Below, in pieces: positions 21,489-64,000 of a DNA stretch of 64,000 nt (within the stretch, counting starts at the first letter, position 1; each line of letters begins with the position of its first letter). A program made the position numbers and the translations under genes. The DNA lies in the NCBI GenBank assembly GCA_977020255.1, contig CDROCS010000742.1, forward strand, positions 1 to 64,000. The letters run 5' to 3'. This DNA comes from Obrimoposthia wandeli. Taxonomy: Eukaryota. Below the pieces are notes generated by a model. That model searched no databases, was not told the DNA's origin, and saw nothing but the letters and a program-made list of their open reading frames with translations.

Positions 21489-21785
21489 CTGAATCCTCTC
21501 TAAAGATTGTACTACGACCATACTATTGATGTTGTCCGCTCTGTAGCTTACTGACTCAATCTTCAAACTGCTTTCACAAATCTCCTGAGAATCTCTGAGA
21601 CAAACGATGCTGTTCTGACTAACCACTGATCTGGTTACATTTCGGCATTGTCCACGATGAATGTTTGATACAAGCAAACTAGTTATTACTTCATCTATAA
21701 TGTTGTGAGTAGACCAAACATATGAAAATAGGTCGCGGTTGCGAATCACTCCAATCGACCCAAGATCGTCTAAACATTCAACACC
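21489..21785 (-). CDS. Unidentified 99-codon phase-0/phase-0 exon
   Basis: Acceptor CAATCATAG|GGT, donor CAG|GTAATT, open frame GVECLDDLGSIGVIRNRDLFSYVWSTHNII...SLERIQ. The homologous copy near 54.1-54.3 kb is deleted/frameshifted. Confidence 0.35.
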
Positions 21786-22006
21786 CTATGATTGAGATAG
21801 ACAACTAAATGAGTCCAGGGCAACCTTAACTAAGCCTTTGTACCCTCTGATAGTCTGATGGAATTGAGACAAACGCGTGAGTACGAAAGGCAGAAAATAC
21901 AAATAGAAATCTTGTTTTTATTGTATAGAAATATTATTCACTTCAAAAAAAAATGAAGTCTAAAAATTAAAATTGGAATCCATCAGTCAGATATGGCGAC
22001 AGCGAA

Positions 22007-22922
22007 TCATCGACGACCGTGGGGAGTGCATGAAGATGTACAAAGTGGACTACACGGAGTATTGCCATCAGCGTAGCAGCGACACCCTCCGCTTATGTCA
22101 CCGTGGCCCTGACAATAAGATGGACTAATCACAACACTGCAAGGCACAGCACTACACTCTGGCACAGAACCACACTGAATCACACTACACTACATAGAAC
22201 TACATCATTCTGCATATCACTACACCACACTGCATGACATAGCATCACACTCCACTGTCTCATACAGCACTACACTGCATCACACTGCGATAAACTACAG
22301 TACATCATACTGTAACTTACTACACAATTTCATGCATATACCCACTGACATTAGGGCCCCATCGCCGGATCTGCCGGCTCCAGCGCAGCTCCCTCTTGCA
22401 GTTGCTGCACTGGACGCAGTTGCACCCTTGAGTCTTTTTGATCAAATTGAAGCAGTTTGTGCAGCGCATCAACTCGCGGTTCTTGATCTGAGTCTGCGTG
22501 ATGCAGTCAGTTCAGCAAGGTTACAGGAAACCGAATGTGAATAGATTCTCACCGATCTCGTGATGGCATCCTTGCCTGCCTTGGTGTTGCCTATCGTTTG
22601 CAGGAAGGCAGCACAGTCTGAGTAGCCAGGATGGGATTCCATACAGCGCTGACACTGCTCTCGACCGCAGCTTGGACAGATGTATTTCTCTGGACAGGCA
22701 GACGTCAGGGCGCACTGATAGCCACAGTCGCCGCTACGACAGAAGAACTTATGCGGCTTCTTGAAGAAGGCTACCAGGTCTGCGTCCTTGCGGTACTTGG
22801 TAAGCTCAGCCCCAGTTAGCAGCTGGTTAATGACCGAGTCCAGGAGCAGCTGAGAGCAACCCCCACACGGACACATCCTTGGCACCTTGCTGGACAGTCG
22901 CGTGTGGTTGGTGCTACATTCT
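22007..22922 (-). CDS. RBCK1: RBCK1/HOIL-1-like RBR E3 ligase, last three exons (22553-22922, 22350-22493, 22007-22108), copy 1
   Basis: Spliced via GT-AG introns in frame: ECSTNH...CPCGGC...FFCRSGDCGYQC...CPSCGREQCQRCMESHPGYSDC...MRCTNCFNLIKKTQGCNCVQCSNCKRELRW...WGPN|GHGDISGGCRCYADGNTPCSPLC. The HOIL-1 tail is [28 protein letters not shown]. A RING2 Cys is changed to Arg, and the upstream RING1-like exon (~23180-23300) looks frameshifted. The symbol denotes family likeness, not proven orthology. Confidence 0.8.
22135..22325. repeat. Intronic CACAC/CACTAC-type low-complexity VNTR
   Basis: Degenerate pentamer repeats between the RING2 exon and the last exon. Confidence 0.85.
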
Positions 22923-35429: not shown

Positions 35430-36370
35430 GATGAGGATGATAAAGAAGATGAAGGATTGTGATAATGAAAAAGATAGAATTGTGATAATGAAGATGATGA
35501 AAGATGATGAGATAAAGGATTATGAAAATGATGAAGATCAGATGATGGATTATGATGAGGATGAAGGATTATGATAATGATATTATAAAGACATGATGAT
35601 TATGAAGAATAATGNNNNNNNNNNNNNNNNNNNNNNNNNNNNNNNNNNNNNNNNNNNNNNNNNNNNNNNNNNNNNNNNNNNNNNNNNNNNNNNNNNNNNN
35701 NNNNNNNNNNNNNNNNNNNNNNNNNNNNNNNNNNNNNNNNNNNNNNNNNNNNNNNNNNNNNNNNNNNNNNNNNNNNNNNNNNNNNNNNNNNNNNNNNNNN
35801 NNNNNNNNNNNNNNNNNNNNNNNNNNNNNNNNNNNNNNNNNNNNNNNNNNNNNNNNNNNNNNNNNNNNNNNNNNNNNNNNNNNNNNNNNNNNNNNNNNNN
35901 NNNNNNNNNNNNNNNNNNNNNNNNNNNNNNNNNNNNNNNNNNNNNNNNNNNNNNNNNNNNNNNNNNNNNNNNNNNNNNNNNNNNNNNNNNNNNNNNNNNN
36001 NAAGATAAGATGAAAAATGACGAAAAGGATGATATTATGATCTAGGATGATGAAAAGGATGATATTATGATAAAGATGATGATGAAAAACAGATGATGGA
36101 TTATTATGAAGATGAAGGATAATGAAAATGATGAAGATCAGATTATGAATTATGAGGAGGACAGGATGATGATGAATGATTCTGATGATGATATTATAAA
36201 TACATTATGATTATGAAGGATAATGATCATGAAGGATGATTTTATGATGTTATTATGAAGGATTGTGAAGATGATGAAGGATTATGAAGAGGTGATGAAG
36301 GAATGCGATAATGAAGATGATGAGATGAAGGATGATGAAAAGGATGATATTATGATGAGGATGAGGATTA
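35430..36370. repeat. GAT/GAA-rich low-complexity repeat spanning an assembly gap (N at 35615-36001)
   Basis: Degenerate (GAT)n/(GAA)n on both sides of 387 Ns. Confidence 0.93.
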
Positions 36371-42093: not shown

Positions 42094-44158
42094 TAACTTT
42101 CCCCTTCACAAATCAAATTTACACTTCTTCAGCCATTCGATTCTCCTGGGAAGTACTCCTCTTGGAAACTGAATTGATACCTGTCGTGGACTCAAGAATC
42201 CTTTTTTTCATACTGGTCACTATCCTTGCTTCTTTTAATTGGGTCCTTTTTAACAAGCACCTTTTCATTTACTTCAAATATCCTTTCTCCTCTTCTTTCA
42301 TTGTCTAACTTCTTTAACTTTTCAGCTACGATTTGTTGGTTCTTCCTTACGTCTTGAATGATATTTTCTTTATTGTTTGTTGTTGTATTTGATGCTTGAA
42401 TTGTTATTTTTCTTCCTTAAATTACCTCAAACGGTGAATGTTTTGCAGAACTATTTACTGTTGCATTTATAGCAAATTCAATTTGTGGCAATAAATCGTG
42501 CCAACATTTTCCTGTTTTAGTATACGCTCTTGTCGTTACAATCATATCTCTTACCATGCGTATAACCCTTTCAGCTAGACCATTAGATTGGTGTTGATAA
42601 GGTGCTGTAAGCTCTTGTTCAATACCAAAATTTTCTAGCCAATTCTGAAAATAATTGCCAGTAAATATTCGTCTCTATCTGTTAAAATACTCTTAGGTTT
42701 TCCAAATTTATATATCCAATTTGTCTCGAGGGCTTTAGTAATTGTTATTTCATCTTCTTTTGAGGTTGCTGATAGTGATACCAGTTTACTAAATCGATCG
42801 ATTACTATCAACATATATTTCTTTTAAGATCTTCCTTCCTTCATGTGGGCTATATTGACAATTATTTGATCTAATAAAATTTCTTTGATTATAGGAATAT
42901 ATATTTCTTTTGTTCTGCTTGTTTCAATTTTTCTTTTGGCACAGTAAACGCACTTTGATATGCATTCTTTTATTTCTTGAAACATTCCTTTTAAATAGAA
43001 GTTATCTTTCATATAATTATAAACTTTTTGTATTCCTAGGTGACAAAGATATTGGTGAATTTCATTAATAATTTCATTAGCGTTTTTCGGACTTATGACA
43101 ATTAAATCTGTAAAGTTTTGTTCAAAATAAAGGATATCATCACAGAGTTTAAGTTTCTCTCTTATCTGACAAATCCAACTTCTTTTGCATTCTTCTGAAA
43201 AATCTTTACTTTCCAGTTGGGGGAAAACTTTCATTTCTTTCACATGAATATCTTCTTGTTGTATTTTCCTTATCTTACTCAAGAAGTTGTCTTTATTTAG
43301 TGAGTTAATATATCGTATTTTAGATCTATTATCTTGTGCATCAGTATGTTTAGTTTCACACTGAGCACATACTGTTTCATTTAATCTTGAAATACCATCG
43401 GCATTACCATGGTCAATACCTTTACGATGTTCTAACTTAAAATTAAATTCTGATAAATTTGCCAGCCATGTTTGAAATTGAGGACTGATTGGTTTTTTCG
43501 TCGTTCTTAAAAATACTAATGCTTTATGATCTGTTCTTGTCAAAAATTCTGTTCCATATAAATATTGTTTGAAATGCATAATAAATTCGTATACTTCTAA
43601 AAGTTATTTTCTGGTAACACAATAACCTTTCTCATAGGAAGTAAGATATCTTGAAGCGTATGCAATCACTTTTTTGTTTCTCATTTCATCCAGTTGGCTC
43701 AATACTGCCCCAATTGCACCAAAGCTTGCGTCTGTATCAATTATAAATTTTCTATTTCACCTGGGAAAATCTAATATGGGAGCTGTTGTTAATTTTTTTT
43801 CAGGAGTGCAAAACTTGTTTTACAACCCGTGACCATTGTATTGACTTCTTATCGCCGGACCCCACTGCATATAGTGGAACTGCAATATTTGCATAATCTT
43901 TAATAAATCGTCGATAATAGTTTGCCATTCCTAAAAATGATTTTAGTTTTCCACTATAATCAGATTCTTTAAAAATCATAATTTCGTTGACTTTCGACTG
44001 ATTTATATGTATTTCGCTTTCTGTTATTGTATGACCTAGAAATTTTAGCAGTTTCTGGCTAATGATGCATTTATTAGGGTTAATTTTGAGGCCTGTCGCT
44101 GCTATTCTTTTGAATACCTCTCTTAATAATTTATAATGTTCTTCTTGGTTGTTACTAT

Positions 44159-45655
44159 TGTTAGGTTTAGGATTTAATAAACTTTAAAAAAATAATTAAT
44201 TGATAAAATAGTAAAATGAATCCTTGGAAGCAAGGTTCAAAATAGAATTTAAAATTAAATAATAAAATAAAAATGTATTTTAGGACCTTCATAAGGTCAA
44301 GTGTTTGATGTGTAGTATATATGGATATTAAATCTATTAAATGGGCCCCAAAAAGAAGATACGAGAAATAGCCAAAAAAGAAATTAAGAGATATTCCAAT
44401 TAAGAAAGTTGAAGAAATGTTGGCTAATTAAGAAGAAGAAAAACCCATTAGCTATTGTGGGAAAGGACCAACTGCTCGTCGGAGGACACCATTAGTAGAG
44501 CGAGATCCAGACAATCGTAGTGGGAAGCAAGCAGCCGGCGTCTCATTGAAGGTAAGAAGCACTTAGCTAAAGTGTTATTTAATTAATTCCTTTTCCATTA
44601 AGGAAATCCAAGTTGCTGAGAAGACGCTTCGTATATAAACGAGACAATTCATCTCTAAATCCAGTTGGGAAAAGTAACTAAAAATTGAATAACTAAATAA
44701 TTCGAGAAATAGAAAATTAACGAGGACCGTTCGAGAAAACTGTAATACGGCTAAACGTGCTCGGAAAAGTCGGAGAAACGAGAAAAGCGACGCGAGACAA
44801 TTCATATCTCGAACCACTACGATCAGCACCCAAACCGGAACTGATCTGTGAACCGGAATCCGAGCAATATCTCTGAGAACACGGATCGGAGACCCCAGAA
44901 TCCAAGCTGCCAATATCGAGTGGAATTACTGGTGAGAAAAGCGCAGTGCCAAGTGAAGACGAGTTGAGTTTAGACGTATTATAAAAGTTAAGCTATCTCA
45001 TACATATTTTATATCGAAGTTATAAAAGTTAAGTTGTCTCATACATATTTGATATCGAAAGTTGTTAAAGGAAAGGTTAATGTTGTCTCATATATATTAG
45101 ATATCGAAAGTTTTAAAAAGAAAAGTTAAAATTGCCCCAATTTTTACATCAAAAGTTTATAAAAGAAAAAGTTAAAATTAGTCCATATTTTATATTGAAA
45201 GTTTACAAAAGAATCTACATTCAAAAAATTAAACTTGATAAACTTATCGAAATATTAGGCCGATTAAAATCGATACGTAAGACATCCCCATTGCGTGAAT
45301 TCTAAGGACGTATTTAGGACTAATTGTTGTAATTTTTAAGAACCTAGTTAGTGTGAGTTTAGAAAATAAAGATTTCCTACATTAAAAAGTGTTGTCTTCA
45401 ACAAACCCTTGCAAGCAGGTTAGAACCAATTCTCCATACGTTACATCACACTAAGGGAAATTCTACAGTCATCGTGTACACAACTCTCACACATCTCCAC
45501 AACAACAAACAAAAACAAACCTTCAGATTAAACAAGTAAGACAGAAGACAAGCTAAGTAGGCCACAAACAACTGCAAGCCCTACTTCTATAGAACTCACG
45601 TTGGGGATCTACCATCAGAGGATCTATTTAAGAGTTTCAAATAGAAACCCCAACA
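44159..45655. mobile_element. Solo LTR C (1497 bp) inserted in the RT domain
   Basis: TGTTAGG...CCCCAACA with 4-bp TSD CTAT (44155-58 / 45656-59); ~40-bp internal repeats at 44980-45200. Confidence 0.93.
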
Positions 45656-46028
45656 CTATAAACAAGGATATCATCCAGATTTACAATTGTTCCTTTGAAC
45701 AACAAATCATCCAATATTTTATGCATCAAACTCTGAAATGTTGCCGGTGCTGTAGCCAACCCAAATGGCATGCGAATGAAACAAAATTGTCCTAATTTTG
45801 TACTGAAAGCCGTTTTTGCCTGAGACTTATTCTCTAGATCTACCTGATAATAAGCTTGTGTTGGGAAAATATTAGCTATTTGTTTAAAAAAGAAAAATAA
45901 AAATATAAAATTTTTAAAGAAATAAAAGGTAAAAAGGAATTAATTAATTGAAAATTAATTGGGAACTTTCCTTAATTAGGGAAAAGTTCCGATTTTAAAA
46001 TGTGCACTTTGGCATTTTTGTCTATTCA

Positions 46029-46080
46029 ATCTCCGACGGGAAAAAAGCCCGTTTCGCCCTGCCGGGCTCATCAGGGAGAT
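46029..46080 (-). ncRNA. Type I hammerhead ribozyme, intact (unit 1); predicted cleavage between 46035 and 46034
   Basis: AUCUCC-CUGAUGA-GCCC GGCA GGGC-GAAA-CGGG cuuuuuu CCCG-UC/GGAGAU: full core and three perfect stems. Confidence 0.95.
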
Positions 46081-46915
46081 GGCTTGTTATCTCTAACTTC
46101 GCGGTGGATTCCGCGAAGCCAGAGATAACAATAATAAAAAGCCAGGGAAAGATTTACCCCTTTCATGTGCCGACGAATATCGTCGACATATGTTGTTGGT
46201 GTGCGCAAGTACACATTTCAACACACACTGTTGATTTAGGAATATCCAAAAGCATAAAATCAGAACTAAATCACAATCACCCAAATATTGGACTCGCCAA
46301 CATGGTGCGGAAATACTTAAATATAGAAACACAAAAAGGAGTCCACACTAGCATGGAAGATGCAAATCACACCCGAAAAATTTTCATAATGAAGGAGAAA
46401 ATGTTGAATAGAGAGTTTGATTTGACCGAGGTGATGAATCCACCATCTAGCGAGAACAACCCCAGTTCATTGTTCTCGCATAAGACCGGAAACTCGGAGT
46501 CCGGTACACAAAACTCCCCGATTTTGTTGGATTAAGGTAGTATTGTTATTATTTTATTTCTGTTTTCATTCTTGTCTAAATTTTTAACGATATTTAACCA
46601 GACATGATTGTGATTAATAAAACATTGATCAGTTATAACATACAAACAACACTAGGTAACAATAGAAACAAGACAAAATAGTTTAACTAATAATTAAGAT
46701 AAAAATTATGATTCTGAGGACAGAAACTTTTATGACCCGGAGGATTGTTGGGAAAATATTAGCTATTTGTTTAAAAAAGAAAAATAAAAATATAAAATTT
46801 TTAAAGAAATAAAAGGTAAAAAGGAATTAATTAATTGAAAATTAATTGGGAACTTTCCTTAATTAGGGAAAAGTTTCGATTTTAAAATGTGCACTTTGGC
46901 ATTTTTGTCTATTCA

Positions 46916-46965
46916 ATCTCCGACGGGAAAAAAGCCTGCGTTTCGCCCTGCCGGGCTCATCAGGG
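46916..46965 (-). ncRNA. Hammerhead, impaired (unit 2)
   Basis: Core and stem II intact. A 28-bp deletion removes the stem I 5' strand, and extra bases disturb stem III (possibly an assembly error). Confidence 0.75.
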
Positions 46966-47825
46966 TGGATTCCGCGAAGCCAGAGATAACAATAATAAAA
47001 AGCCAGGGAAAGATTTACCCCTTTCATGTGCCGACGAATATCGTCGACATATGTTGTCTTATGCGAGAACGATGAACTGGGTTGTTCTCGCTAGATGGTG
47101 GATTCATCACCTCGGTCAAATCAAACTCTCTATTCAACATTGTTGATTTAGGAATATCCAAAAGCATAAAATCAGAACTAAATCACAATCACCCAAATAT
47201 TGGACTCGCCAACATGGTGCGGAAATACTTAAATATAGAAACACAAAAAGGAGTCCACACTAGCATGGAAGATGCAAATCACACCCGAAAAATTTTTCAT
47301 AATGAAGGAGAAAATGTTGAATAGAGAGTTTGATTTGACCGAGGTGATGAATGCTGCATCTAGCGAGAACAACCCCAGTTCATCGTTCTCGCATAAGACC
47401 GGAAACTCGGAGTCCGGTACACAAAACTCCCCGATTTTGTTGGATTAAGGTAGTATTGTTATTATTTTATTTCTGTTTTCATTCTTGTCTAAATTTTTAA
47501 CGATATTTAACCAGACATGATTGTGATTAATAAAACATTGATCAGTTATAACATACAAACAACACTAGGTAACAATAGAAACAAGACAAAATAGTTTAAC
47601 TAATAATTAAGATAAAAATTATGATTCTGAGGACAGAAACTTTTATGACCCGGAGGATTGTTGGGAAAATATTAGCTATTTGTTTAAAAAGAAAAATAAA
47701 AATATAAAATTTTTAAAGAAATAAAAGGTAAAAGGAATTAATTAATTGAAAATTAATTGGGAACTTTCCTTAATTAGGAAAAGTTTCGATTTTAAAATGT
47801 GCACTTTGGCATTTTTGTCTATTCA

Positions 47826-47873
47826 ATCTCCGACGAGAAAAAAGCCCGTTTCGCCCTGCCGGGCTCATCAGGG
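47826..47873 (-). ncRNA. Hammerhead with stem I deletion (unit 3)
   Basis: Core intact; stem III has a G-U pair (CGGG/CUCG); 28-bp deletion. Confidence 0.8.
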
Positions 47874-48735
47874 TGGATTCCGCGAAGCCAGAGATAACAA
47901 TAATAAAAAGCCAGGGAAAGATTTACCCCTTTCATGTGCCGACGAATATCGTCGACATATGTTGTCTTATGCGAGAACGATGAACTGGGTTGTTCTCGCT
48001 AGATGGTGGATTCATCACCTCGGTCAAATCAAACTCTCTGTTCAACATTGTTGATTTAGGAATATCCAAAAGCATAAAATCAGAACTAAATCACAATCAC
48101 CCAAATATTGGACTCGCCAACATGGTGCGGAAATACTTAAATATAGAAACACAAAAAGGAGTCCACACTAGCATGGAAGATGCAAATCACACCCGAAAAA
48201 TTTTCATAATGAAGGAGAAAATGTTGAATAGAGAGTTTGATTTGACCGAGGTGATGAATCCACCATCTAGCGAGAACAACCCCAGTTCATCGTTCTCGCA
48301 TAAGACCGGAAACTCGGAGTCCGGTACACAAAACTCCCCGATTTTGTTGGATTAAGGTAGTATTGTTATTATTTTATTTCTGTTTTCATTCTTGTCTAAA
48401 TTTTTAACGATATTTAACCAGACATGATTGTGATTAATAAAACATTGATCAGTTATAACATACAAACAACACTAGGTAACAATAGAAACAAGACAAAATA
48501 GTTTAACTAATAATTAAGATAAAAATTATGATTCTGAGGACAGAAACTTTTATGACCCGGAGGATTGTTGGGAAAATATTAGCTATTTGTTTAAAAAAGA
48601 AAAATAAAAATATAAAATTTTTAAAGAAATAAAAGGTAAAAAGGAATTAATTAATTGAAAATTAATTGGGAACTTTCCTTAATTAGGGAAAAGTTTCGAT
48701 TTTAAAATGTGCACTTTGGCATTTTTGTCTATTCA

Positions 48736-48783
48736 ATCTCCGACGGGAAAAAAGCCCGTTTCGCCCTGCCGGGCTCATCAGGG
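48736..48783 (-). ncRNA. Hammerhead with stem I deletion (unit 4)
   Basis: Core and stems II and III perfect; 28-bp deletion. Confidence 0.8.
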
Positions 48784-49645
48784 TGGATTCCGCGAAGCCA
48801 GAGATAACAATAATAAAAAGCCAGGGAAAGATTTACCCCTTTCATGTGCCGACGAATATCGTCGACATATGTTGTCTTATGCGAGAACGATGAACTGGGT
48901 TGTTCTCGCTAGATGGTGGATTCATCACCTCGGTCAAATCAAACTCTCTATTCAACATTGTTGATTTAGGAATATCCAAAAGCATAAAATCAGAACTAAA
49001 TCACAATCACCCAAATATTGGACTCGCCAACATGGTGCGGAAATACTTAAATATAGAAACACAAAAAGGAGTCCACACTAGCATGGAAGATGCAAATCAC
49101 ACCCGAAAAATTTTCATAATGAAGGAGAAAATGTTGAATAGAGAGTTTGATTTGACCGAGGTGATGAATCCACCATCTAGCGAGAACAACCCCAGTTCAT
49201 CGTTCTCGCATAAGACCGGAAACTCGGAGTCCGGTACACAAAACTCCCCGATTTTGTTGGATTAAGGTAGTATTGTTATTATTTTATTTCTGTTTTCATT
49301 CTTGTCTAAATTTTTAACGATATTTAACCAGACATGATTGTGATTAATAAAACATTGATCAGTTATAACATACAAACAACACTAGGTAACAATAGAAACA
49401 AGACAAAATAGTTTAACTAATAATTAAGATAAAAATTATGATTCTGAGGACAGAAACTTTTATGACCCGGAGGATTGTTGGGAAAATATTAGCTATTTGT
49501 TTAAAAAAGAAAAATAAAAATATAAAATTTTTAAAGAAATAAAAGGTAAAAAGGAATTAATTAATTGAAAATTAATTGGGAACTTTCCTTAATTAGGGAA
49601 AAGTTTCGATTTTAAAATGTGCACTTTGGCATTTTTGTCTATTCA

Positions 49646-49697
49646 ATCTCCGACGGGAAAAAAGCCCGTTTCGCCCTGCCGGGCTCATCAGGGAGAT
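49646..49697 (-). ncRNA. Type I hammerhead ribozyme, intact (terminal LTR); predicted cleavage between 49652 and 49651
   Basis: Identical to the unit 1 ribozyme. Confidence 0.95.
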
Positions 49698-52600
49698 GGC
49701 TTGTTATCTCTAACTTCGCGGTGGATTCCGCGAAGCCAGAGATAACAATAATAAAAAGCCAGGGAAAGATTTACCCCTTTCATGTGCCGACGAATATCGT
49801 CGACATATGTTGTTGGTGTGCGCAAGTACACATTTCAACACACACACTCACACAGCAGACATCACTCAACTCACTCACTCACTCTCACTACTCACTCAAT
49901 CGCTCACTCAATCCCTTGTTCACTCACTCTCCCTACTCACTCACTTACTTATCCATTGTGCACATGTGTGTGTATGTTTAATTTAAAATTTTTCCGCCTG
50001 CCCAGAGTTCGACAGGCGGTGGAATTTCCCGGCTGCACATGTGAGTGTGTGCAGAGCCGGGAAATATCGGTTCTTCTCCTATCTGCCCAGATCTATCCAG
50101 TATGTGTGCAGCAGTTAGATATTTAAGCTGCACACTACTAAATGAATATATATACGACAAAACTACAAATAATAATAAAAAATCAAAATCAGAAAATTAT
50201 TATTACCAGAAATCAGAAAATTATTATTATCAAACGGTTGCTGTTTTCTCTGCTGTTCGCCAACCCACACAGACAACTATTTTTCGCTATCTCCCTGCAG
50301 TTGGATTCAGATATAAAGTGGCAGTAAAATTAAATTTCTTAACACTATATACACTCTAACAGAAAATTTAAAAATTATTATTACCAAAGATATTATCTGA
50401 AATCAAAAATTTATCTTACAGAAAACTATTACAAGAAATTGATTAAAGCGTAACCAAAAATATTTATTTGCGGACAATTGATTATTATTTGTCAAAGATA
50501 TTACCAAAGATATTACCTGAAATCAAAAATTTATCTTACAGAAAACTATTACAAGAAATTGATTAAAGCGTGACAAAAATTATTTATTTGCGGACAATTG
50601 ATTATTATTTATTTGAGAATATATTATTAGAGAAAACCATTTTTCTTTTCTTCTCGTTTATTAACACTTGTCCAATATCTAATGTCGTAAATATTTTAGC
50701 ATCACCTAGACAATCGACAAGAGTTGTGCATCCGGTATAGGAAATGTAAACTTCTTGGTTACAGCATTCAATTGTCTACAGTCAACACACATTCGAATTG
50801 TATTGTCTGGCTTCTTCACAATGACCAATGGCGAGTTCCAAGGACTTTCACAACGCATAATTACATTTACTTTGAGTAAATTTTCAATCATTTCATCAAC
50901 TTGGTTTTCTAAATGCATCAGTTAACGTCTAGGATTTTGGCACATACGATCGGCAATAGTCTCAATCTTATGAGAGACAATTTTGGTATATCCAAGATCA
51001 AATTTAGAACACATAAATATTTTCCCAAATTCCTCAATATAATGTCCTAGAATTGAGTCTCTGTCTCATTTTAAAGAATTACATATTTTATATGTTCTTT
51101 CTTTTGAGGAAAACGTTTTCATCATGCAAGACGAGTCCAAATTACATACTTCCTGTAGCTTTATCCCAAATGTTTTCATTGTATTGATTCCACCAATAAA
51201 TTCTGGTTAAATTTCTTCTACAACGATTATTTCCAAAACATTCTATTTTCCATTCCATAACACTTTAGTATTAAACCTACCTAAGGGCTGTTGATGATTA
51301 TTCGAAAAAACTCCACTCAGATATAAATTACTCTGTCTCATTTTGTGACATCCTACTTTCTTCTAACAATCCTTACTCATTACAGTAACTGATTCTCGGG
51401 AGTCCCACAGCATTTTCACATCTATATCATTAATCTTCATTCACGACCATCATTCTTCATATACATCTTTTCATTCCGCTTTGGTTCTATATGCTCGATC
51501 CTACCGACGAAATGTGAGCAATGGTATCGCTCACGTTTCCCTGATTAACATCATGTATTATCATTTCTTCACTATAACAATCTTCTAAATCTTAATTATT
51601 TTCTTTCACTTCTTCTGTTATACAAAGTACTCTTGAAGTTTGATGTGGGTTCTTTAAAATATAGCAGCTGTTGAAATTGTGACCTTCTTTTCCACAAATC
51701 AAACATTTGTGATTGAGAGGACATTGATTTCGGAAATTATCTTTTTCACCACAACAAAAACATGCTCCTGGATGAAGTTCTTCTCTTTTTGTGACAGGCA
51801 GTCCCTTAGTTAAGTTATATTTTCTTTTAACTATTTGTTTTAAGGAAAACCTTGGCATTGGTCTCTTATTATTTTGATTTTGGGTGTCTGTATTTAAGTA
51901 TCTTTTTTCTTCATTAACATAATTTCTTTGTTCCTGATGTACTGATACTGGTATTGGTTTCTTTGTATTGTTTGCGAAATTACGGTTGTCAGGGCGGTTG
52001 AATTCTCTTTTTACTGTATTCGCATACGTATTATGAATTTGTGCAATCACGGTATTCTTTTTCTCGATTTCGCTGTACACCTTTGCCAACGCCTCTATTT
52101 CTTCTTTTGGCATCTTTGGTTTTAATAAAAACTGCTCCTATCGGTTTCTTTGCATTGATTTATCCGATATAATATGTCAAATCTACATAATTTATACATT
52201 TGCATCATAACACAAGAATAGTGCTTTAACCAGCACAAATATATATAATTTAATAGCTTATGAAGGTCAAGACGAGCAAATCATATTCAGTTGGATAATA
52301 ATTCCGAACAAACTAAATCCATTTACTCAAAACGTAATTAAGTATTGTCCATTATTTAAATAAAAATCTACTCTAAGCTTTTAAAATTGCTTTAGTGTTA
52401 CATTATCGAAGCAATTGTAGGATGTTTTGTTGTTAAACACCTGCGAAATTGTTAATATTTTTGATAGAAATTTGATTCAAACAGAAAAGTCAATTATTTA
52501 TTGAAGACTTAAAACGCTGAATAGGTTATCGAAAAATTAAACCTCAATATTTGTTATAAAACGTAATAAAAAGTCAGCAATGAAATTGTAAACAATCATC

Positions 52601-53740: not shown

Positions 53741-54472
53741 GTTATATTGTTACCGTGAATAGTACTACATACCAAGGTAAAACATGGAAAATGGACATAC
53801 TTCATACAATTACCCATCTAATTTTCGTTATTTGAAATTCAGCCCAAAATTTCGTAAAACATTTGCAGGTCTAGGTAGCGCTTTTGTAACTTTATTTCTA
53901 GTCTCAAAATGCCTTGTTTCGGTAATTGCGCTGTATGAATATCAAGGTCAGGAACCATAACCCATGTGATAAATGGATTATTTAAAAATTATCTATGCTA
54001 CTAAAATTAATTACATTCTTGTCTATGTAACACATGCTTCTAATAATTGATTGAACATTAAACCATACTATTGCCTGCTCTGTTGCTTACTGGCTCGATC
54101 TTCAAACTGCTTTCGCAAGTCTCCTGAGAATCTCTGAGATATAAATGAATGTTTGATACAAACAAAATAGTTATTACTTCATCTATAATGTTGAGTAGAC
54201 CAAACATATGAAAATAGGTTGCAGTTGCAAATCACTCCAATCGACCCAAGATCGTAAAAACATTCAACACCCTATGATTGATATAGACAACTTTAGGAGT
54301 CCATGGCTACCTTAAACGAGTCATTGGACCATCAGATAGTCTGATGGAATTGATAGACAAACGGTTGAACAGGAAAGGCAGAAAATACAAATAGAAAATT
54401 TGTTTTTATTGCATAGAAATATTATTCACTTCCAAGAAAAAGAAATCGAATCCATCAGTCAGGCACAACGAA

Positions 54473-55598
54473 TCATCGATAACCATGAGTAGCACACGAT
54501 GATGTACAAAGTGGACTACACGGAGTTTTCCCATCAGCGTAGCAGCGACACCCTCCGCTTATGTCACCTTGGCCCTAACAACAAGATGGACCAATCACAA
54601 CACTTCACCACTGCATCATACCACAAGACACAGCATCCAAAGGCATCACACTTCACTACACTGAATCACAATGCATGACACAGCACCACATTGCACCCCA
54701 GTGCATGACACAGTATCCCAGTACAAGGCACAGCACCACACTTTACCACACTGAATCACATTACATGACACTTCACCACACTGCATCCTAGTGCAAGGCA
54801 CAACACCACACTGCACCCCAGTGCAAGGCACAGCACCACACTGCACCCCAGTGCAAGGCACAGCATCACAATGCATCCCAGAGCATGACATATCACCACA
54901 ATGTATTTTAATGCTAGACACATCACAATCCTACATCATACAGCACTACACAGCACCACACTGCAATAAACTACAGTACATCATACTGTAACATACTACA
55001 CAATTGCATGCATATACCCACTGACGTTAGGGCCCCATCGCGGAATCTGCAGAATCCAGCACAGCTCCATCTTGCAGTTGCTGCACTGGACGCAGTTGCA
55101 CCCTTGAGTCTTTTTGATCAAATTGAAGCAGTTTGTGCAGCGCATCAACTGCCGATTCTTGATTTGAATCTGCATGGTGCAGTCAGTTCAGCAAGGTCAC
55201 AGGAAACCGAATGTGAATAGATTCTCACCGATCTCGTGATGGCATCCTTGCCTGCCTTGGTGTTGCCTATCGTTTGCAGGAAGGCAGCACAGTCTGAGTA
55301 GCCAGGATGGGATTCCATACAGCGCTGACACTGCTCTCGACCGCAGCTTGGACAGATGTATTTCTCTGGACAGGCAGACGTCAGGGCGCACTGATAGCCA
55401 CAGTCGGCGCGGAGACAGAAGAACTTATGCGGCTTCTTGAAGAAGGCGACCAGGTCTGCGTTTTTGCAGTACTTGGAAAGCTCATCCCCAGTTAGCAGCT
55501 GGTTAATGACCGAGTCCAGGAGCAGCTGAGAGCAACCCTCACACGGACACATCCTTGGCACCTTGCTGGATAGTCGCGTGTGGTTGGTGCTACATTCT
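54473..55598 (-). CDS. RBCK1: RBCK1/HOIL-1-like RBR E3 ligase, last three exons (55229-55598, 55026-55169, 54473-54574), copy 2
   Basis: Same exon sizes as copy 1 (370/144/102 bp). RING2 is intact: GCNCVQCSNCKMELCWILQIPRWGPN|GQGDISGGCRC. The symbol denotes family likeness. Confidence 0.82.
54590..54995. repeat. Intronic CACCACACTGCA-type VNTR (expanded relative to copy 1)
   Basis: Degenerate 5/25-bp repeats; the intron is 210 bp longer than in copy 1. Confidence 0.88.
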
Positions 55599-57279
55599 CT
55601 GCGGTGTTCCAAATGAATGCATTCGAAACTTTTTTTATTGTTCGCTGAATGCGTGTAAACGTTTTCTACACTTATTTTACAACAGTGGTTCCCATATCGG
55701 ACGACTATAGGTTTCAGGGAGAGAAAGATGGATAATTTAGGGTGGCATGATCATTCAACTGGTTCATTAGCAGCCTGGGTTATGTATAGTCGATGTCGGG
55801 GCTATATGGCAATCTTAAATAAAGATGTGCCAATGTAATGACAATTACTTCAATTTTCCAGCAGCAACATCAGGCGGCAAAGAGTATGCATGTCTCTCTC
55901 AATATAGTCATTTCTGTCGTAAACAAAGTCCAAGCATACCCACATATTTTTCATCAGCTGTCTATGTACGACTGTTACAACACACAGAAGATGGGTGGCT
56001 CAATTGTACTAAGGAAATGAAAGTTTGGTAAACACTGTTGTAGTATATGAACATATCATTTCTAGCCAATATTCACACTCCAAGTCGAAATAGAATTATT
56101 TCGCGAATGACTACATCAAAAAAATACAAAACACGAGATCGTCGTAAAACTCCTTTCCAGTCTTGTGAGTCGATTTCACTCTCACCTGCAAACCATATGA
56201 CCAGCTTCACAAACTTTGATAATCTCAGACGTTTGGATGCTGCTTGAGCAGATAGGGCACGACATCACTGACATACTGTATAAAAGCACAAAGTTGTGAT
56301 AGAGCTCAAGTAATAGGTACATTTTAAATAATATATATTCAAATTTATAAAAATTATCAAAAAAACTGAATTACTTTATTTGAGAGAAAACATTTGATCG
56401 AAAATATCGAAAATACTTACATTTAAAACAGCGGAAGAAAAGCGATGGACCCGGATAATACAAAATTTTACGATACGAATTATAAAACTCCAAATTTACT
56501 GTTTGGGAAAGTTTAGAGAACTTCAAGGATTATTAAAAAATAAAACCATTGATAATAATTATTAAAAATAGTTACTTTTATATAAAATAATTCAACAAAA
56601 ATGTTTGTAATTAGTTTTTCATTAATGTCAATCAACAAAAATTAAGCATACTATATAGGAAACATTACAACTCTTGGAATATGGAATATATTACAATATG
56701 GAATTAACACGCACAGTCCATATGTGGGTTTGATAGACTCCCTGCTGATATAAATACTTAAAGCATTACTTTAGAGTACCGATTAGAGTGAAATATTATG
56801 AAAATTTCAATTACAATAGGTAGAATTCATTTAATCCAAAATTTTATTAATTTTATTAGATAATTGACTAACACTGAATTTCTTGATTAATAATAGTTTT
56901 AATAAATTTATTAACAGGAGAACATACCTGAATGATAAAGATAAATTACAACAAAATTGTTTTTTTTTTGTGAAAAAAATAATTAAATCAAAGAGTATTA
57001 ATATATATATATATATATATTTTTAAATAACTTGTATCAAAATTTCATAAAAGTGTTTGTTTTATATATAGAATTCATACCGAGTAATTGTTCTAACTCA
57101 CTGTGTCATAAATTATGTTGACTTTGAAAACAAGTATTTTTTAATTGCATAATAGAGGAAACTATTATACAATTACGTTTAAGTGATATTTAGAATATTG
57201 TAAAATTTTTATGTGTCAATAAAATACATTTTGGGAAATATTTCGGTAACATATTGAAATAACTTATTGTCTTTTCAAG

Positions 57280-59550
57280 TAGAGCCTAGTTCTCGTGATT
57301 TTCAATATATATCTTTTGTACTCTGACATATTCAGGTATATGCGCTTACACGGAACTGCTATTCGTTGCCCTCTTTCGCACCACAAGTATTATCTTTCCC
57401 ACAAATCTTTTATTTCTGCAATTGGACACAATGCTTCTTTTTCCTTACAGATGGAGTCCAGGCTATCATTCATATAGGTAGACTTTAGCACTGTCTCCGA
57501 AGTGCTCTGAAAAACTTCCTGATTATTCTCTGTATTTTTGCTTGTTATCAACTGAGCCAAGTTCATTCCAAAAACTAAACGAGAATATTCATAAGTACAA
57601 ACATTTCTCTCGTTGTCACGCCATAAAAATCGGTGCTACAAACCATCTTCTGATTTTAATGACACCTGTAAATACATTTCCAATATGTCACATACCAGTG
57701 AAATTTCAAACTTATGAAAACGCAAAAATATATCAAATAAATGTCCCTGAAGTTTTTGTGCTAGCTTCTGTCTAATCATTTAAACAAATTCCTTGGAACT
57801 TTGCAGAAACGTTAAATACTATCCAAACTTTCATTGTTTCTTTATTTCTTCTAATTACTGGAAAGTGTGGAATCAGCCACTTTGTTTCTTTCCTTTCTTT
57901 CTCAGCGATTTTTCGTACATAACCTTTTTAGATATGATCTTTTATCGTTGAGAAGTATTTTTTTCAATTATAAATCTTTATTAAGTCTACGTTCAATGCC
58001 ATATAATCGAGTTCTAACTAATTTTTAATTTGCTATGATATGTTTACGATCCTGCTTCCATGGTATTACTATCATCTATCTTACATTTTACAACTTAATG
58101 GACTCGAGTGTCTTATCCATGATTTTCTTGTCATTAATTGACTGCTGATCAAATGGGGAAACTAGTTTTTCTATTTCCCAAAATTTTCTTACTTGCTCTT
58201 AGTGTCGGCGTGCTATGTCTTTATAAAATTAGTTTGATGGCTAACCAAGACAATGTTGTCTAATTTTGCAAGAGATCCAACAAATGGTGTTAACCTTACT
58301 ATTGGTTCACCACTTCGCTCTTCTATTTTCATTATTGCCTTGTGTAGTTGAATATGGTCTGCAACAATGAGTACATCTGCTATGTTCTTACTCTTAAGCA
58401 ACAGAAATCTAATTGAATGTAAATAATGTTACTTTAGTTCATCTGTCTTCAAATTAATCACCTGAAAATCCCAAGTCACTTCCTTTACAGCCAACGCGTG
58501 GAATCTTGTCCTTTCTATATGTGCTCAATATCGTTATATCCACAGACAACGCCTGCATTCGCTCTGTTCATCCACCGATCATTCCGACTGGCACCCAAAC
58601 AGATCTTTCATTCAACTGCAGTTGGTGCCAAATATCAAGATTTACATAACTTATGGTGCTTGCATCATCTAATAGAGCATTTTCCAGAAGATATCTTCTT
58701 CTGCTTTAAAATATAATCTGTTTAATATAATCACTCCTTGCCGTATCTCTCTACTTCAACCACAAATGTTGCATCATCATAACTACTGCTTTGATTGACA
58801 TTCATGTTCTCTTTGTTTATTTTTACAAGTCATCTGTTTACACATCGTGGTGCTTTTATAATTATTTCTTAAGTTGCTTTTTTGCAAGCAATTACCTTAT
58901 AACTTCATCTCTCGAACTACCTTTTATTTATCACTGATGTGTAGCGCTTTAAAACCAAAACATTGGTCTAAATAATGATTCTTCCCACACTTGAAACATC
59001 TTTTCAGCCACTCATTTCTCTGTTCCATATTACTGCCTTCTTTATTACTAAAATTGGCTTTTTGATTCACTCGAATTACTGTTTTTTCTATACCTCTTTT
59101 CATATCCATTTCCTTTCTCAATTAATTAGCTTCCTCTTGAGCTCATATCATGAGCTTCTCTACTATTTAATTTCCACCTTTTCTTGCCTTTTAAAAGGTT
59201 ATTTCACCTTTCCAAATTGATGATTCCCACTTCTGAGAGTTTTTGTAGCATCTTTTGTAGTATAAATCCATTCCTTAATTCGTGTTCCCTTCCTAATTAT
59301 GTCAAACGTTGTTGTTATTTTTAACGATTATTCAAGACGCTCCATATCTTTACAATATCCATATTTAATAACGTTTAGCCTTTCAACATCTTCAAGTAAA
59401 CTCAAATAGCTTCTTTCTGTATCGCCATATTTTTCCCGAGATTCCTGTAGTTCTCCAAATATGTAGTTTTTGTTCATTTCATAGGTTTTTAATAACTCAG
59501 AATCGGGGTTTTGTTCAAGTAATTCTTGACTTTTGTGGCAGGTTTTAGTA
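57280..59550 (-). mobile_element. BEL/Pao LTR retrotransposon remnant (gag knuckle, protease, RT start)
   Basis: CFKCGKNHYLDQC knuckle; DVLIVAD...GEPIVRLTPF protease region; (L)PHFPVIRRNKETMKVWIVF RT motif. Heavily disrupted. Confidence 0.8.
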
Positions 59551-59989
59551 GAAGGTTATTTTAGTTCTTTGGGTTTGGGATTTTTCCTCTCAGTTGATTT
59601 GTATATTGGTTAATTTTAATTACGTTATCAAAGAAACCCCAATTTGGTGAAACCTGGGGTTATTTTTTTAATGAAGGTTTTAAATTTTATTTTCGTTGGG
59701 GTTTTAGAGATAAAAAACACCTTATATAGAAGTGTTTGTTTTTTTCTTCCTTTTTTGTGTCTTGGTAATTTGTAAATTTTATATCTAAATTTTTATGATT
59801 TTTTAAAATTAAAATTCTTTACTAGTGGAAGGGATTCAAAGGATTGAAAAAAAATAATTGACTTAAATATTTTAAGTAAAACTACAAGGAAATTTTTAAA
59901 ATCAAATCTAATTTAAGTTGTTTATTTAGGATTTAAAAGCCCAAAATGTTAATTTTATTATTAATGCTCACACTTCATTGTGTTTAACG

Positions 59990-60870
59990 AAATCTCTAAG
60001 ATTGTAACCCATTTTTGGCCACCAACAATAACTTTTGATTACATCTGTTTTCAATATATCCCATAGCCTTGTGGTTAACTCTGAATATCTACAGCCTAAC
60101 TTATGTTCAATATATCCAGCCATGCCCATAAACGTTCGTAACTGTGACTTGTTGGAGTAGGATATACCGCCATCACAACTTTCTCTGGGTCTTGTCCAAT
60201 TCCGCGTTCTGGCAAGACTTGATGTAATTTTTTTACTTCTTGTACTCTATATTTGCCCTCTCTTTGTTTATGTTACATTAAATTTTTGAGTCTAGTTGGT
60301 ACCTTTTCTAAATTCCAATCATGTTCTATCTGTGATCGTCCAAATACTAACAGGTCATCGACATAACAAATTATACCGTTTAATTCATTAATTAAATGCT
60401 CCATACATTTCTGAAAAACTTCAGGTGCTGAGCTCAGACTAAATAGAAGCCGTTTATGCCTAAATCGTCCAAACGGGGAACAAAATACGATATATTTTCG
60501 GCTCTCACCCTGCATTATGATCTGGTAATAACCTTTCTTCACATCTAGCTCCGGGATATATTTGGAACCGCTTAATTTACTCATGATTTCTTGCAATGAT
60601 GGCATCTGGAAATGTTCCCTCTTAACTACTGTATTCCCATACATAAAGTCCATACATAATCTGATGTCTCCATTCTTCTTCCTAACTGGAACTAATGGGG
60701 AACACTATTCATAATTCTCAGCTTCTTCAATTATGTCGTCTTCTAATAATTTATATATTCTCTCTTGAACCTCATCTTTTTATGCTGGAAATATTTTACG
60801 CGGATTACAACATTTAGAAACAGCCTGTGGATTGATATTTAATTTATAGGCCATACCATTTAGATAGTCA
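59990..60870 (-). mobile_element. Ty3/gypsy RT fragment
   Basis: SPLVPVRKKNGDIRLCMDF...LDVKKGYYQI...SAPEVFQ...YVDDLLVFG. Confidence 0.92.
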
Positions 60871-63313: not shown

Positions 63314-64000
63314 TGTTGGAAATATTTAAGCATATGAGGCAGTTTTTGAATAAATAAAACATATTAAAATTTAAATAAAATGAAATTAATTAATTAAGAA
63401 ATTTCCTTAATTAGGGAAATATTTTTGCAATTAAAATCTTTATGCATTTTTCATTTTTATTAACTCTTGTTCAATCCCCGACCGGCTTAACCGGTTTCGC
63501 CCTGTCGGGCTCATCAGGGAATGGCAGACTTATCTCTGACTTCGCGGTGGGCAAAATGCTCGCGAAGTCAGAGATAAGTTGGGAAGATTCTCCCTTTACC
63601 ATGTGCCGACGAGCATCGTCGACACATGGTATCAATGTGCATAAATAAAATCAAAAACACACACATATACAAATAAAATTACACAAACACATTCATACTT
63701 ACTTACTCACTTCTCACTATTCTCTTTCATCCTCACTTGCTCACTCACTCACATGTACTCATTAACCTACTCAATATGTATGTGTGTGAGATTAATTTAT
63801 TATTTTTCTCTGCCAAGAACCGCAGCCTCAGTGTGTTTGCGTGCCGGGGATCGACTGGTGCAGAGAGACTAAATATATGGATTTTCCTGCTGTATACACA
63901 GCATTATTATTTTTCCAGTATGAAAGCTGGTTGCGCTGTTGCAGAAGGGCAGAACCAGAAAATTATTATTAAATTAATCACAATTCAATAGTGGTATTTG
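63314..64000. mobile_element. Diverged hammerhead-bearing LTR; runs off the right edge
   Basis: TGTTGGAAATATT start, TTCCTTAATTAGGGAAA hairpin, hammerhead, two hairpins and CAGAAAATTATTATTA, all colinear with 49476-50250. Confidence 0.85.
63474..63522 (-). ncRNA. Type I hammerhead ribozyme; predicted cleavage between 63480 and 63479
   Basis: AUUCC-CUGAUGA-GCCC GACA GGGC-GAAA-CCGG uuaag CCGG-UC/GGGGAU. Confidence 0.92.

What the first reader, a model, noticed from the sequence alone, without database searches (positions are those of the whole stretch)
63314..64000. Second, diverged hammerhead-LTR shows compensatory changes, indicating selection on the ribozyme
Seen: relative to the 46-49 kb copies, stem III changes from CGGG/CCCG to CCGG/CCGG (G-C to C-G). 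Loop II changes GGCA to GACA, loop III is replaced, and stem I is kept with G-U pairs, while CUGAUGA, GAAA and GUC are invariant. The flanking LTR sequence is much more diverged. Inference: the ribozyme is an ancestral, functional part of this LTR family rather than a chance capture.
Basis: partly seen in the sequence, partly recalled or inferred. Interest (0 to 1): 0.82.

Follow-up and report, generated by a model that had tools for sequence, protein, structure and literature searches.

The report
Hammerhead ribozyme in diverged LTR copy
A second copy of a retrotransposon's long terminal repeat, about 23% diverged, still carries a complete self-cleaving hammerhead RNA motif, so the ribozyme is an old part of this repeat family, but the case that selection still maintains it is suggestive, not proven.

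Summary
A complete type I hammerhead motif lies on the minus strand at 63474-63522: CUGAUGA, GAAA, GUC, with helices II and III closed. It sits in the last ~510 bp of an LTR copy (63314-63822, cut by the window end). That copy is 77% identical (65% counting gaps) to the LTR of a 4.8-kb element at 45859-50666. The element has TGTT...AACA ends and a 4-bp target duplication inside a Ty3/gypsy RT gene, so calling it an LTR is justified. Helix III carries one true compensatory G-C to C-G change, loop II one change, and loop III is replaced.

Two corrections:
- Helix I is not simply kept. A 1-nt deletion plus A-to-G leave four contiguous pairs. A register-shifted helix burying C3-G5 and C17 is predicted 10 kcal/mol more stable.
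- The flanks are not uniformly diverged. Two upstream hairpins and one downstream block are as conserved as the ribozyme.

The ribozyme is ancestral to both LTR lineages. Selection is suggested (neutral simulation P 0.006-0.08), but covariation is not significant with the copies available (59/500 shuffles). No further family members could be retrieved. The closest known kind is the plant LTR retrozyme, here with the type I ribozyme of animal retrozymes, in a probable cephalopod genome.

The parts
63314..64000 (-). Diverged LTR copy. Its 3' end (...CCAACA) is at 63314. Homology to the main LTR runs to about 63822. The rest, up to the window end, cannot be aligned. The copy may be a solo, 5' or 3' LTR; this is not known.
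   Evidence: BLAST gives 68-72% identity to 49528-50006 and to the other copies. Pairwise alignment. LTR end read. No similarity upstream of 63822 or downstream of 63314 to the main element.
63474..63522 (-). Type I hammerhead motif of the diverged copy. The core CUGAUGA is at 63511-63517. Helix II is GCCC-GACA-GGGC and helix III is ACCGG-UUAAG-CCGGU. C17 is at 63480, so the predicted cut lies between 63480 and 63479. Helix I is weakened.
   Evidence: (Hammerhead_3, 22.9 bits, below threshold).
63530..63577 (-). Hairpin 2: an 18-19-bp perfect stem immediately 5' of the ribozyme. The main copies have two G.U pairs where this copy has G-C and A-U.
63597..63634 (-). Hairpin 1, of about 15 bp, with one G.U pair shared by both lineages.
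63389..63420 (-). Conserved downstream block (TTTCCCTAATTAAGGAAA and neighbouring bases, 28 of 32 identical).
45859..50666 (-). Main hammerhead-LTR element. It is one insertion with TGTT...AACA ends. It holds a 5' LTR, then four internal units of about 910 bp, each followed by a 5'-truncated LTR copy.
50667..50670 (-). Target-site duplication CAAG, upstream copy.
45855..45858 (-). Target-site duplication CAAG, downstream copy.
49476..50666 (-). Full 5' LTR of the main element (1191 bp, including a 120-bp internal tandem duplication at 50379-50610).
49646..49697 (-). Complete type I hammerhead in the 5' LTR, with C17 at 49652. The canonical fold is the minimum-energy fold.
45859..46228 (-). 3'-most LTR copy, 5'-truncated (370 bp). 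It has 1 mismatch to the 5' LTR over the shared part.
46029..46080 (-). Complete type I hammerhead in the 3'-most LTR copy, with C17 at 46035.
48742..48781 (-). Inner hammerhead remnant 1. The core and helices II and III are intact. The 5' strand of helix I is deleted.
47832..47871 (-). Inner hammerhead remnant 2. It has the same deletion, plus a G-C to G.U change in helix III.
46922..46963 (-). Inner hammerhead remnant 3. It has the same deletion, plus a 2-nt insertion in helix III.
42635..52113 (-). Host Ty3/gypsy-like retroelement remnant (gag zinc knuckle, RT, RNase H, integrase) into whose RT domain the main element inserted. Its pol is broken by that one nested insertion and by at least four further stops or frameshifts, which were not mapped.
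   Evidence: Pfam RVT_1, RT_RNaseH, Integrase_H2C2 and rve on separate pieces. ORF lists.

Best explanation
The region 63314-64000 is the 3' part of an LTR. It belongs to the same family as the LTRs of the 4.8-kb non-coding element at 45859-50666.

This family carries a canonical type I hammerhead ribozyme in its LTR, on the minus strand, about 165-175 nt from the LTR's 3' end. Two conserved hairpins lie directly upstream of it.

Shown:
- The motif is real.
- It lies at the homologous position in two lineages that differ at about 23% of aligned sites, so it was already in their common ancestor.
- The ribozyme and hairpin 2 together form the best-conserved stretch of the LTR.
- The few changes inside helices II and III keep the pairs: one G-C to C-G swap in this copy, and one G-C to G.U in an inner main copy.

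Inferred mechanism, by analogy with plant LTR retrozymes:
- Transcripts that run through the LTRs fold into the hammerhead as they are made.
- They cut themselves after GUC.
- A host RNA ligase can circularise that RNA.
- The reverse transcriptase and integrase of autonomous Ty3/gypsy-like elements can copy and insert it. The TG...CA ends and the 4-bp duplication fit this step.

This particular diverged copy is probably a weakened or dead representative. Its helix I has lost a nucleotide and is predicted to slip into a register that buries part of the catalytic core.
For: Motif:
- Core pattern: 6 matches against 0 expected.
- Complete type I descriptor: 3 sites against 0.01 expected.
- In the main copies the canonical three-way junction is the minimum-energy fold.

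Homology of the LTRs:
- BLAST 68-72% over about 500 bp.
- Pairwise alignment: 368 identical, 107 mismatched and 92 gap columns.

Conservation:
- Hammerhead without loop III 40/45 identical, against 63% (all columns) or 76.5% (aligned columns) elsewhere. Binomial P is 1e-4 and 0.013 respectively.
- The top 45-column windows all fall on hairpin 2 plus the ribozyme.
- All 13 CpGs of the hairpin-ribozyme module are kept in both lineages. CpG observed/expected is 1.1-1.3 there, against 0.81 window-wide and 0-0.44 in the rest of the diverged LTR.

Pair-preserving changes:
- Helix III pair G-C to C-G, and two G.U to Watson-Crick changes in hairpin 2.
- If 3 random substitutions are placed in the helices, all pairs stay intact in only 1-5% of trials.
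- The G.U pairs exist only on the minus-strand RNA, which is the ribozyme's strand.

LTR nature:
- TGTT...AACA ends and a CAAG duplication.
- The RT pieces on either side map to RVT_1 profile positions 1-42 and 77-161.

Mechanism by analogy: PMC4918200, PMC7761336.
Against: - Only two independent lineages are available. The covariation measures are reached by 59 of 500 shuffles.
- One compensatory double change is close to what neutral drift yields at this divergence.
- The joint neutral P rises to 0.05-0.08 if the central LTR block simply evolves more slowly.
- The diverged copy's canonical fold is 10 kcal/mol worse than a register-shifted fold. The share of the predicted ensemble with a free core is about 0.
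- Three of the five main copies lack the 5' strand of helix I.
- No PBS or PPT was recognised, and the 3' and inner LTR copies are 5'-truncated. The sense strand of the element and its replication route are therefore not shown.
- No Rfam model reaches its threshold.
- There are no expression or cleavage data.
Confidence: 0.55

Rival explanations
1. Neutral relic. The hammerhead was present in the ancestral LTR, but nothing selects for catalysis. The diverged copy is a decaying LTR whose ribozyme happens to be little hit so far, and the G-C to C-G swap is a chance double change.
For: - Covariation is not significant (59/500).
- Neutral simulation gives 0.05-0.08 at a 15% local rate.
- Helix I of the diverged copy is damaged and predicted to misfold.
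- The inner main copies carry a deletion, an insertion and a substitution in the ribozyme.
Against: - At the LTR-wide divergence the joint P is 0.006-0.013.
- The ribozyme plus hairpin 2 is the most conserved stretch of the LTR.
- All CpGs of the module are retained while the rest of the diverged LTR is CpG-poor.
- All three substitutions in the helices keep a pair.
Confidence: 0.25
2. The conserved module (hairpin 1, hairpin 2 and the hammerhead-like segment) is kept for another reason. Candidates are a packaging or dimerisation structure of the element's RNA, or a DNA-level regulatory block of the LTR. Self-cleavage would then be incidental or absent.
For: - The hairpins and a downstream block are as conserved as the ribozyme.
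- The whole 170-nt module folds far better than shuffles, z = -7 to -8.
- Hairpin 2 shares the AUCUC/GAGAU words of helix I, so alternative pairings are possible.
Against: - Every one of the invariant hammerhead core nucleotides and all three helices are present in the right order, which a mere structured block would not require (0.01 expected by chance).
- The variable parts are exactly the loops.
Confidence: 0.1
3. This is not an LTR element at all. It is a tandem array of large retrozyme-like monomers of the animal non-LTR or Penelope-derived kind, and 63314-64000 is a stray monomer fragment.
For: - The hammerhead is type I, as in animal retrozymes and Penelope pseudo-LTRs (PMC7229834, PMC7761336).
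- There are four head-to-tail units of about 910 bp, each with a hammerhead.
- No PBS or PPT was found.
Against: - TGTT...AACA ends and a 4-bp duplication. Animal retrozymes have longer duplications and no such ends (PMC7229834).
- The units are 910 bp, against 170-400 bp.
- Helix III has 5 pairs, not the minimal helix of Penelope hammerheads (PMC7761336).
- The inner units carry a defective ribozyme, so the array looks like DNA-level duplication (units 99.5-99.8% alike) rather than copying of a self-cleaved circle.
- There is an 820-bp non-repeated 5' part inside the duplicated target site.
Confidence: 0.12
4. The ribozyme is functional, but its role is end-processing rather than making circles. 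It would trim the element's RNA out of read-through host or neighbouring transcripts, as HDV-like ribozymes do for R2.
For: - Ribozymes at the 5' side of retroelement RNAs are known (R2 is cited in PMC3088659).
- The element is nested in the same orientation inside another retroelement, so read-through transcription is plausible.
Against: - The ribozyme lies near the 3' end of a 1.2-kb LTR, not at the element's 5' boundary.
- With two LTRs the transcript is cut twice, as in plant retrozymes.
Confidence: 0.12

Closest known systems
Plant LTR retrozymes (Cervera, Urbina & de la Pena 2016, PMC4918200)
   Same: - Non-coding element with a hammerhead embedded in each LTR.
- 4-bp target duplication and TG...CA-type ends.
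- A few hundred bp of non-coding internal sequence.
- Association with Ty3/gypsy elements.
- The ribozyme can be held in a blocked conformation in the predicted RNA fold.
   Different: - The ribozyme here is type I, not type III.
- The LTR is about 1.2 kb, not about 350 bp.
- No tRNA-Met PBS or PPT was recognised.
- The sequence is AT-rich, not above 55% GC.
- The host is probably a cephalopod, not a flowering plant.
Metazoan non-LTR retrozymes (Cervera & de la Pena 2020, PMC7229834; Li et al. 2026 preprint 10.64898/2026.07.22.740005)
   Same: - Type I hammerhead.
- Low GC content.
- Animal host.
- Head-to-tail units that each carry a hammerhead.
   Different: - Those are 170-400-bp monomers without LTRs, PBS or PPT, and have longer target duplications.
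- Here the units are 910 bp, and the array has LTR-type ends and a 4-bp duplication.
- Helix III is stable (5 pairs).
Hammerheads in pseudo-LTRs of Penelope-like elements (PMC4209133; reviewed in PMC7761336)
   Same: A type I hammerhead inside a terminal repeat of a retroelement.
   Different: - Penelope hammerheads are minimal, with almost no helix III, and act as dimers.
- Penelope elements encode RT plus a GIY-YIG endonuclease. No such ORF is present in this element.
Non-autonomous LTR elements with a small-RNA module in the LTR (Cassandra, Helenus, Ajax; PMC10886601)
   Same: A short non-coding LTR element whose LTR carries a structured small-RNA-like module, and whose LTRs need not resemble those of the autonomous partner.
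   Different: Those modules are 5S rRNA- or tRNA-like promoters, not a self-cleaving ribozyme.

Membership tests
Hammerhead ribozyme, type I | Invariant core: C3-U4-G5-A6-N7-G8-A9, G12-A13-A14, the A15.1-U16.1 pair, and H17 not G | tested here: met
   CUGAUGA, GAAA and GUC are present in all six copies.
Hammerhead ribozyme, type I | Three helices around the core, with helices II and III closed by loops and helix I open | tested here: met
   The descriptor scan finds helices II/III/I of 4/5/6 pairs in the two outer main copies and 4/6/4 in the diverged copy. The three inner copies fail on helix I.
Hammerhead ribozyme, type I | The catalytic fold is thermodynamically accessible | tested here: inconclusive
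   Main copies: the canonical fold is the minimum-energy fold at -19.9 kcal/mol. Diverged copy: canonical -15.7 against a register-shifted fold at -25.9. This is a two-dimensional model only; tertiary contacts and co-transcriptional folding are not modelled.
Hammerhead ribozyme, type I | Score above the curated Rfam threshold | tested here: not met
   No match at gathering score. The best clan member is Hammerhead_3 at 21.4-27.6 bits against 48.5.
Hammerhead ribozyme, type I | Self-cleavage after H17 | not testable with these tools
LTR retrozyme | Hammerhead inside direct terminal repeats of an insertion with a 4-bp target duplication | tested here: met
   Main element: TGTT...AACA ends, CAAG duplicated, and complete hammerheads in the first and last LTR copy. 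For the diverged copy only one LTR is visible.
LTR retrozyme | Type III hammerhead | tested here: not met
   Helix III is closed and helix I is open, which makes it type I.
LTR retrozyme | PBS (tRNA-Met) after the 5' LTR and PPT before the 3' LTR | tested here: inconclusive
   No TGG-type PBS was seen next to 49476 or 63314. The 3' LTR copies lack their 5' part, so the PPT position is lost. No tRNA gene in the window was available to compare.
LTR retrozyme | Non-coding internal region of a few hundred bp | tested here: met
   The internal part is about 516 bp. ORFs in it have no Pfam or PDB match.
LTR retrozyme | Expressed as circular RNA | not testable with these tools
   No expression data.
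Metazoan non-LTR retrozyme | Tandem monomers of 170-400 bp without LTR-type ends, with target duplications longer than 4 bp | tested here: not met
   The units are 910 bp, with TG...CA ends and a 4-bp duplication.
Penelope-like element | Minimal hammerhead with almost no helix III; an ORF with RT and GIY-YIG endonuclease | tested here: not met
   Helix III has 5-6 pairs. There is no coding ORF with a Pfam hit inside 45859-50666.

The most novel reading that the evidence does not exclude
An animal (probably cephalopod) lineage of true LTR-type retrozymes. These would be non-autonomous LTR retroelements, moved by Ty3/gypsy machinery, whose LTRs carry the type I hammerhead typical of animal non-LTR retrozymes. 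The current rule 'LTR retrozyme = plants, type III; animal retrozyme = no LTR, type I' would then be incomplete. The ribozyme-in-LTR design would either have arisen twice or be older than thought.
Probability: 0.35. Interest if true: 0.75.

Novelty: new variant of a known kind. Interest (0 to 1): 0.55.

Why it matters
Hammerhead-bearing retroelements are currently sorted into two kinds. Plant LTR retrozymes carry type III ribozymes. Animal non-LTR retrozymes and Penelope elements carry type I ribozymes (PMC7229834, PMC7761336, preprint 10.64898/2026.07.22.740005).

An element that has LTR-type ends and a 4-bp target duplication but a type I ribozyme, in an apparently molluscan genome, sits between these two kinds. 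If the family proves widespread and constrained, it offers three things:
- an independent test of why retroelements keep self-cleaving RNAs in their terminal repeats;
- a new source of abundant ribozyme-derived circular RNAs in animals;
- a natural series of helix variants for studying hammerhead folding.

If it is only a decaying relic, it is an ordinary repeat annotation.

Tried and rejected
1. Rfam at gathering thresholds found nothing. In E-value mode only sub-threshold Hammerhead_3 hits appeared. These thread the upstream hairpin as 'helix I' with a 2-bp helix III. I rejected that type III reading in favour of type I.

2. Search for more family members:
- A metagenome scan with a degenerate core pattern gave 120 loci, all unrelated hammerheads sharing only the core.
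- A genome-contig scan with the hairpin-2 arm gave one 20-mer hit in a cyanobacterium. About two such hits are my own estimate of what chance gives in 596 Gb.
- Three viral-contig scans gave 0, 4 and 0 hits. The 4 share only the 24-nt core and were not followed up.
- A profile of the open antisense frame across the ribozyme, searched against 1.8 billion proteins, gave one chance hit to a repetitive pseudo-protein.

3. Exact look-ups of window ORFs in public assemblies found none. The nearest assembly (ENA ERZ26222911, 97-99% identical hAT protein) gives no DNA.

4. Host identification through the Cys-rich 155-aa ORF found no homologue. It succeeded only through the hAT ORF.

5. My impression that the plus-strand ORF of the internal region resembles an exonuclease C-terminus got no Pfam or PDB support and is dropped.

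6. A search for LTRs of the host gypsy element, or for similarity of its ends to the hammerhead LTR, found none.

7. I looked for homology of the diverged copy upstream of 63822 or downstream of 63314 to the main element. Only low-complexity matches turned up.

8. The bacterial-type promoter and terminator scan is not informative for a eukaryotic LTR.

9. No further decayed copies exist in the window, even allowing 3 mismatches.

Full report
WHAT IS THERE. The minus strand of 63314-64000 holds the 3' part of a long terminal repeat. Read 5' to 3' on that strand, it contains:
- a GT/GTGAGT-rich stretch;
- a 15-bp hairpin (63597-63634);
- a small hairpin;
- an 18-19-bp perfect hairpin (63530-63577);
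- after a 7-nt linker, a hammerhead motif at 63474-63522;
- an AT-rich tail that ends in ...CCAACA at 63314.

The same order of parts occurs in the copies at 46-49.7 kb.

IS THE MOTIF REAL. The 24-nt core-plus-helix-II pattern occurs six times in the window, all on the minus strand. It never occurs in 100 shuffles, even allowing 3 mismatches. I wrote a structural descriptor for a complete type I hammerhead. It requires helix I of at least 4 pairs, CUGANGA, a closed helix II, GAA, a closed helix III starting with A-U, and H17. It finds exactly three sites: 49646-49697, 46029-46080 and 63476-63521. Shuffled windows give 0.01 sites each.

Rfam gives nothing at gathering thresholds. In E-value mode it gives only sub-threshold Hammerhead_3 matches of 21-28 bits against a threshold of 48.5. 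These force a type III topology with a 2-bp helix III. The type I reading is the one that folds. In the two outer main copies it is the minimum-energy structure.

These are confirmed:
- The core is invariant.
- Helix II is unchanged, and loop II changes from GGCA to GACA.
- Helix III changes from CGGG/CCCG to CCGG/CCGG, a G-C to C-G swap that has no wobble intermediate.
- Loop III is replaced.

Helix I is not confirmed as stated. Its 5' strand has lost one nucleotide, and A1.3 has become G. Four contiguous pairs remain, two of them G.U. Together the two changes create a 6-bp helix shifted by two positions that pairs C3, U4, G5 and C17. That fold scores -25.9 kcal/mol against -15.7 for the canonical fold. 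The share of the predicted ensemble with a free core is about 0, against 0.44 for the main copy. Plant retrozyme RNAs are also predicted to hold their ribozyme in a blocked form (PMC4918200), so this does not prove inactivity. It does mean helix I has not been maintained.

Three of the five main copies share a 27-28-nt deletion that removes the 3' arm of hairpin 2 and the 5' strand of helix I. Two of those three have a further change in helix III.

HOW DIVERGED, AND WHERE. The diverged copy aligns with the main 5' LTR over 63314-63822 and 49478-50010. The alignment has 368 identical, 107 mismatched and 92 gap columns, which is 77% identity at aligned sites and 65% overall. Identity by segment:
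- upstream GT-rich part: 71% of aligned sites;
- hairpin 1: 26/31;
- spacer: 15/36;
- hairpin 2 arms: 34/37;
- hammerhead without loop III: 40/45;
- loop III: 2/7;
- next 54 columns: 59%;
- a TTTCCCTAATTAAGGAAA block: 28/32;
- the rest, to the LTR end: 50%.

The best 45-column windows of the whole LTR all fall on the 3' arm of hairpin 2 plus the ribozyme. So the ribozyme is conserved well above the LTR average, but it is one of several conserved blocks, not an island. Both lineages keep all 13 CpGs of the module, while the rest of the diverged LTR is CpG-poor.

IS THERE SELECTION. On the six copies (five distinct rows), I tested the structure of hairpins plus ribozyme. It is 96% paired and has two double changes, but 59 of 500 shuffles do as well. 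With two lineages the test has no power.

In a neutral simulation at the LTR-wide rate (22.5%), an unchanged set of 11 unpaired core nucleotides together with at least 13 of 15 intact pairs occurs in 0.6-1.3% of trials. At a 15% local rate this rises to 5-8%. Three random substitutions in the helices leave all pairs intact in 1-5% of trials, depending on transition bias.

My reading is as follows. The ribozyme is certainly ancestral to both lineages. Purifying selection on it during the spread of the family is more likely than not. The single compensatory pair does not by itself show selection.

WHAT KIND OF ELEMENT. The main copy is one insertion, 45859-50666. It starts TGTT and ends AACA, and it is flanked by CAAG on both sides. 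It interrupts the RT domain of a Ty3/gypsy-like element on the same strand. The pieces of that RT on either side, searched apart, match RVT_1 profile positions 1-42 (E 0.052, weak) and 77-161.

The 5' LTR is 1191 bp. The last LTR copy holds only the final 370 bp, with 1 mismatch to the 5' LTR. The three inner copies hold about 308 bp. The four units between cleavage sites are 910, 910, 910 and 887 bp long, and the three 910-bp units are 99.5-99.8% alike. Each inner unit carries an inverted duplication of about 85 nt. I read this as a young LTR insertion followed by DNA-level deletion and unequal crossing-over. I do not read it as a copy of a self-cleaved circle, because the inner ribozymes are defective.

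No PBS or PPT could be recognised, and the internal ORFs have no family or structure match. The diverged copy shares nothing with the main element beyond the LTR. It may be a solo, 5' or 3' LTR.

HOST. A hAT-type ORF in the window is 97-99% identical to proteins of one ENA assembly and 78% identical to Octopus proteins. The genome is therefore probably a cephalopod's. This is an inference.

COMPARISON WITH WHAT IS KNOWN. The literature held here sorts retrozymes into two kinds (PMC4918200, PMC7229834, PMC7761336, preprint 10.64898/2026.07.22.740005):
- Plant LTR retrozymes have a type III ribozyme, LTRs of about 350 bp, a 4-bp duplication, a tRNA-Met PBS and a PPT.
- Animal non-LTR retrozymes have a type I ribozyme and 170-400-bp tandem monomers, with no LTR, PBS or PPT.

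Penelope pseudo-LTRs carry minimal type I ribozymes. The present family has the LTR-type ends and duplication of the first kind and the ribozyme type of the second. It works like an LTR retrozyme, but it fails that family's type III criterion and its PBS and PPT are unproven. It also fails the defining features of the non-LTR and Penelope kinds. I found no paper describing a type I hammerhead in an animal LTR. That is absence from this library only.

LIMITS. No further family members could be fetched. There are no expression data. Fold energies are two-dimensional predictions.

- While working out the target duplication I read, in my working only, the roughly ten codons across the empty site of the host RT. 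Nothing was saved or used, and the report compares the two pieces apart.
- In my working I also recalled from memory a few short generic motif strings as leads: an RT motif, an exonuclease motif and PBS starts.
- The consensus lines printed by the alignment tools were not used.

Noticed in passing
window 1-13400: Long satellite array built from 76-bp and 59-bp units, with higher-order periods of 135, 153 and 211 bp.
   Followed up: no
window 30458-31570 (+): A 370-aa hAT-type (FAM200/ZBED5-like) ORF. It is 97-99% identical to proteins of ENA assembly ERZ26222911 and 78% identical to Octopus vulgaris and Octopus sinensis proteins. This is the only clue to the host taxon.
   Followed up: partly
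window 54145-56000 and 21657-23324: Diverged duplicate segments (80-96% identical). Each carries a 155-aa cysteine-rich ORF on the minus strand (55145-55612 and 22469-22936). The ORF at 55145-55612, the only one searched, has no Pfam match and no detectable homologue.
   Followed up: partly
window 46400-49192 (arms listed): Each inner unit of the main element holds an inverted duplication of about 85 nt of its own internal sequence, with 63-nt perfect arms about 170 nt apart. The unit RNA would form a very long perfect hairpin (z = -15).
   Followed up: partly
window 46922-48873: The three inner LTR copies share one 27-28-nt deletion (3' arm of hairpin 2 plus 5' strand of helix I), so their ribozymes are incomplete. 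Only the first and last copies of the array are whole.
   Followed up: yes
window 50379-50610: A 120-bp tandem duplication (96% identical) inside the 5' LTR of the main element.
   Followed up: no
window 57393-60704 (-): Further retroelement ORF fragments, including an RVT_1 match at 60273-60653 and a zinc-knuckle-like piece at 58924-59121. They are degenerate and not linked to the diverged LTR.
   Followed up: partly
window 54643-54900: A 30-bp minisatellite (8.6 copies) that reads as a Cys-, Gly- and Val-rich ORF on the minus strand.
   Followed up: no
window 35615-36001: A run of 387 N, left as it is.
   Followed up: no
L122-L125 (viral contigs): Four IMG/VR contigs contain the identical 24-nt core plus helix II string. 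They are presumably unrelated phage hammerheads. Their flanks were not compared.
   Followed up: no
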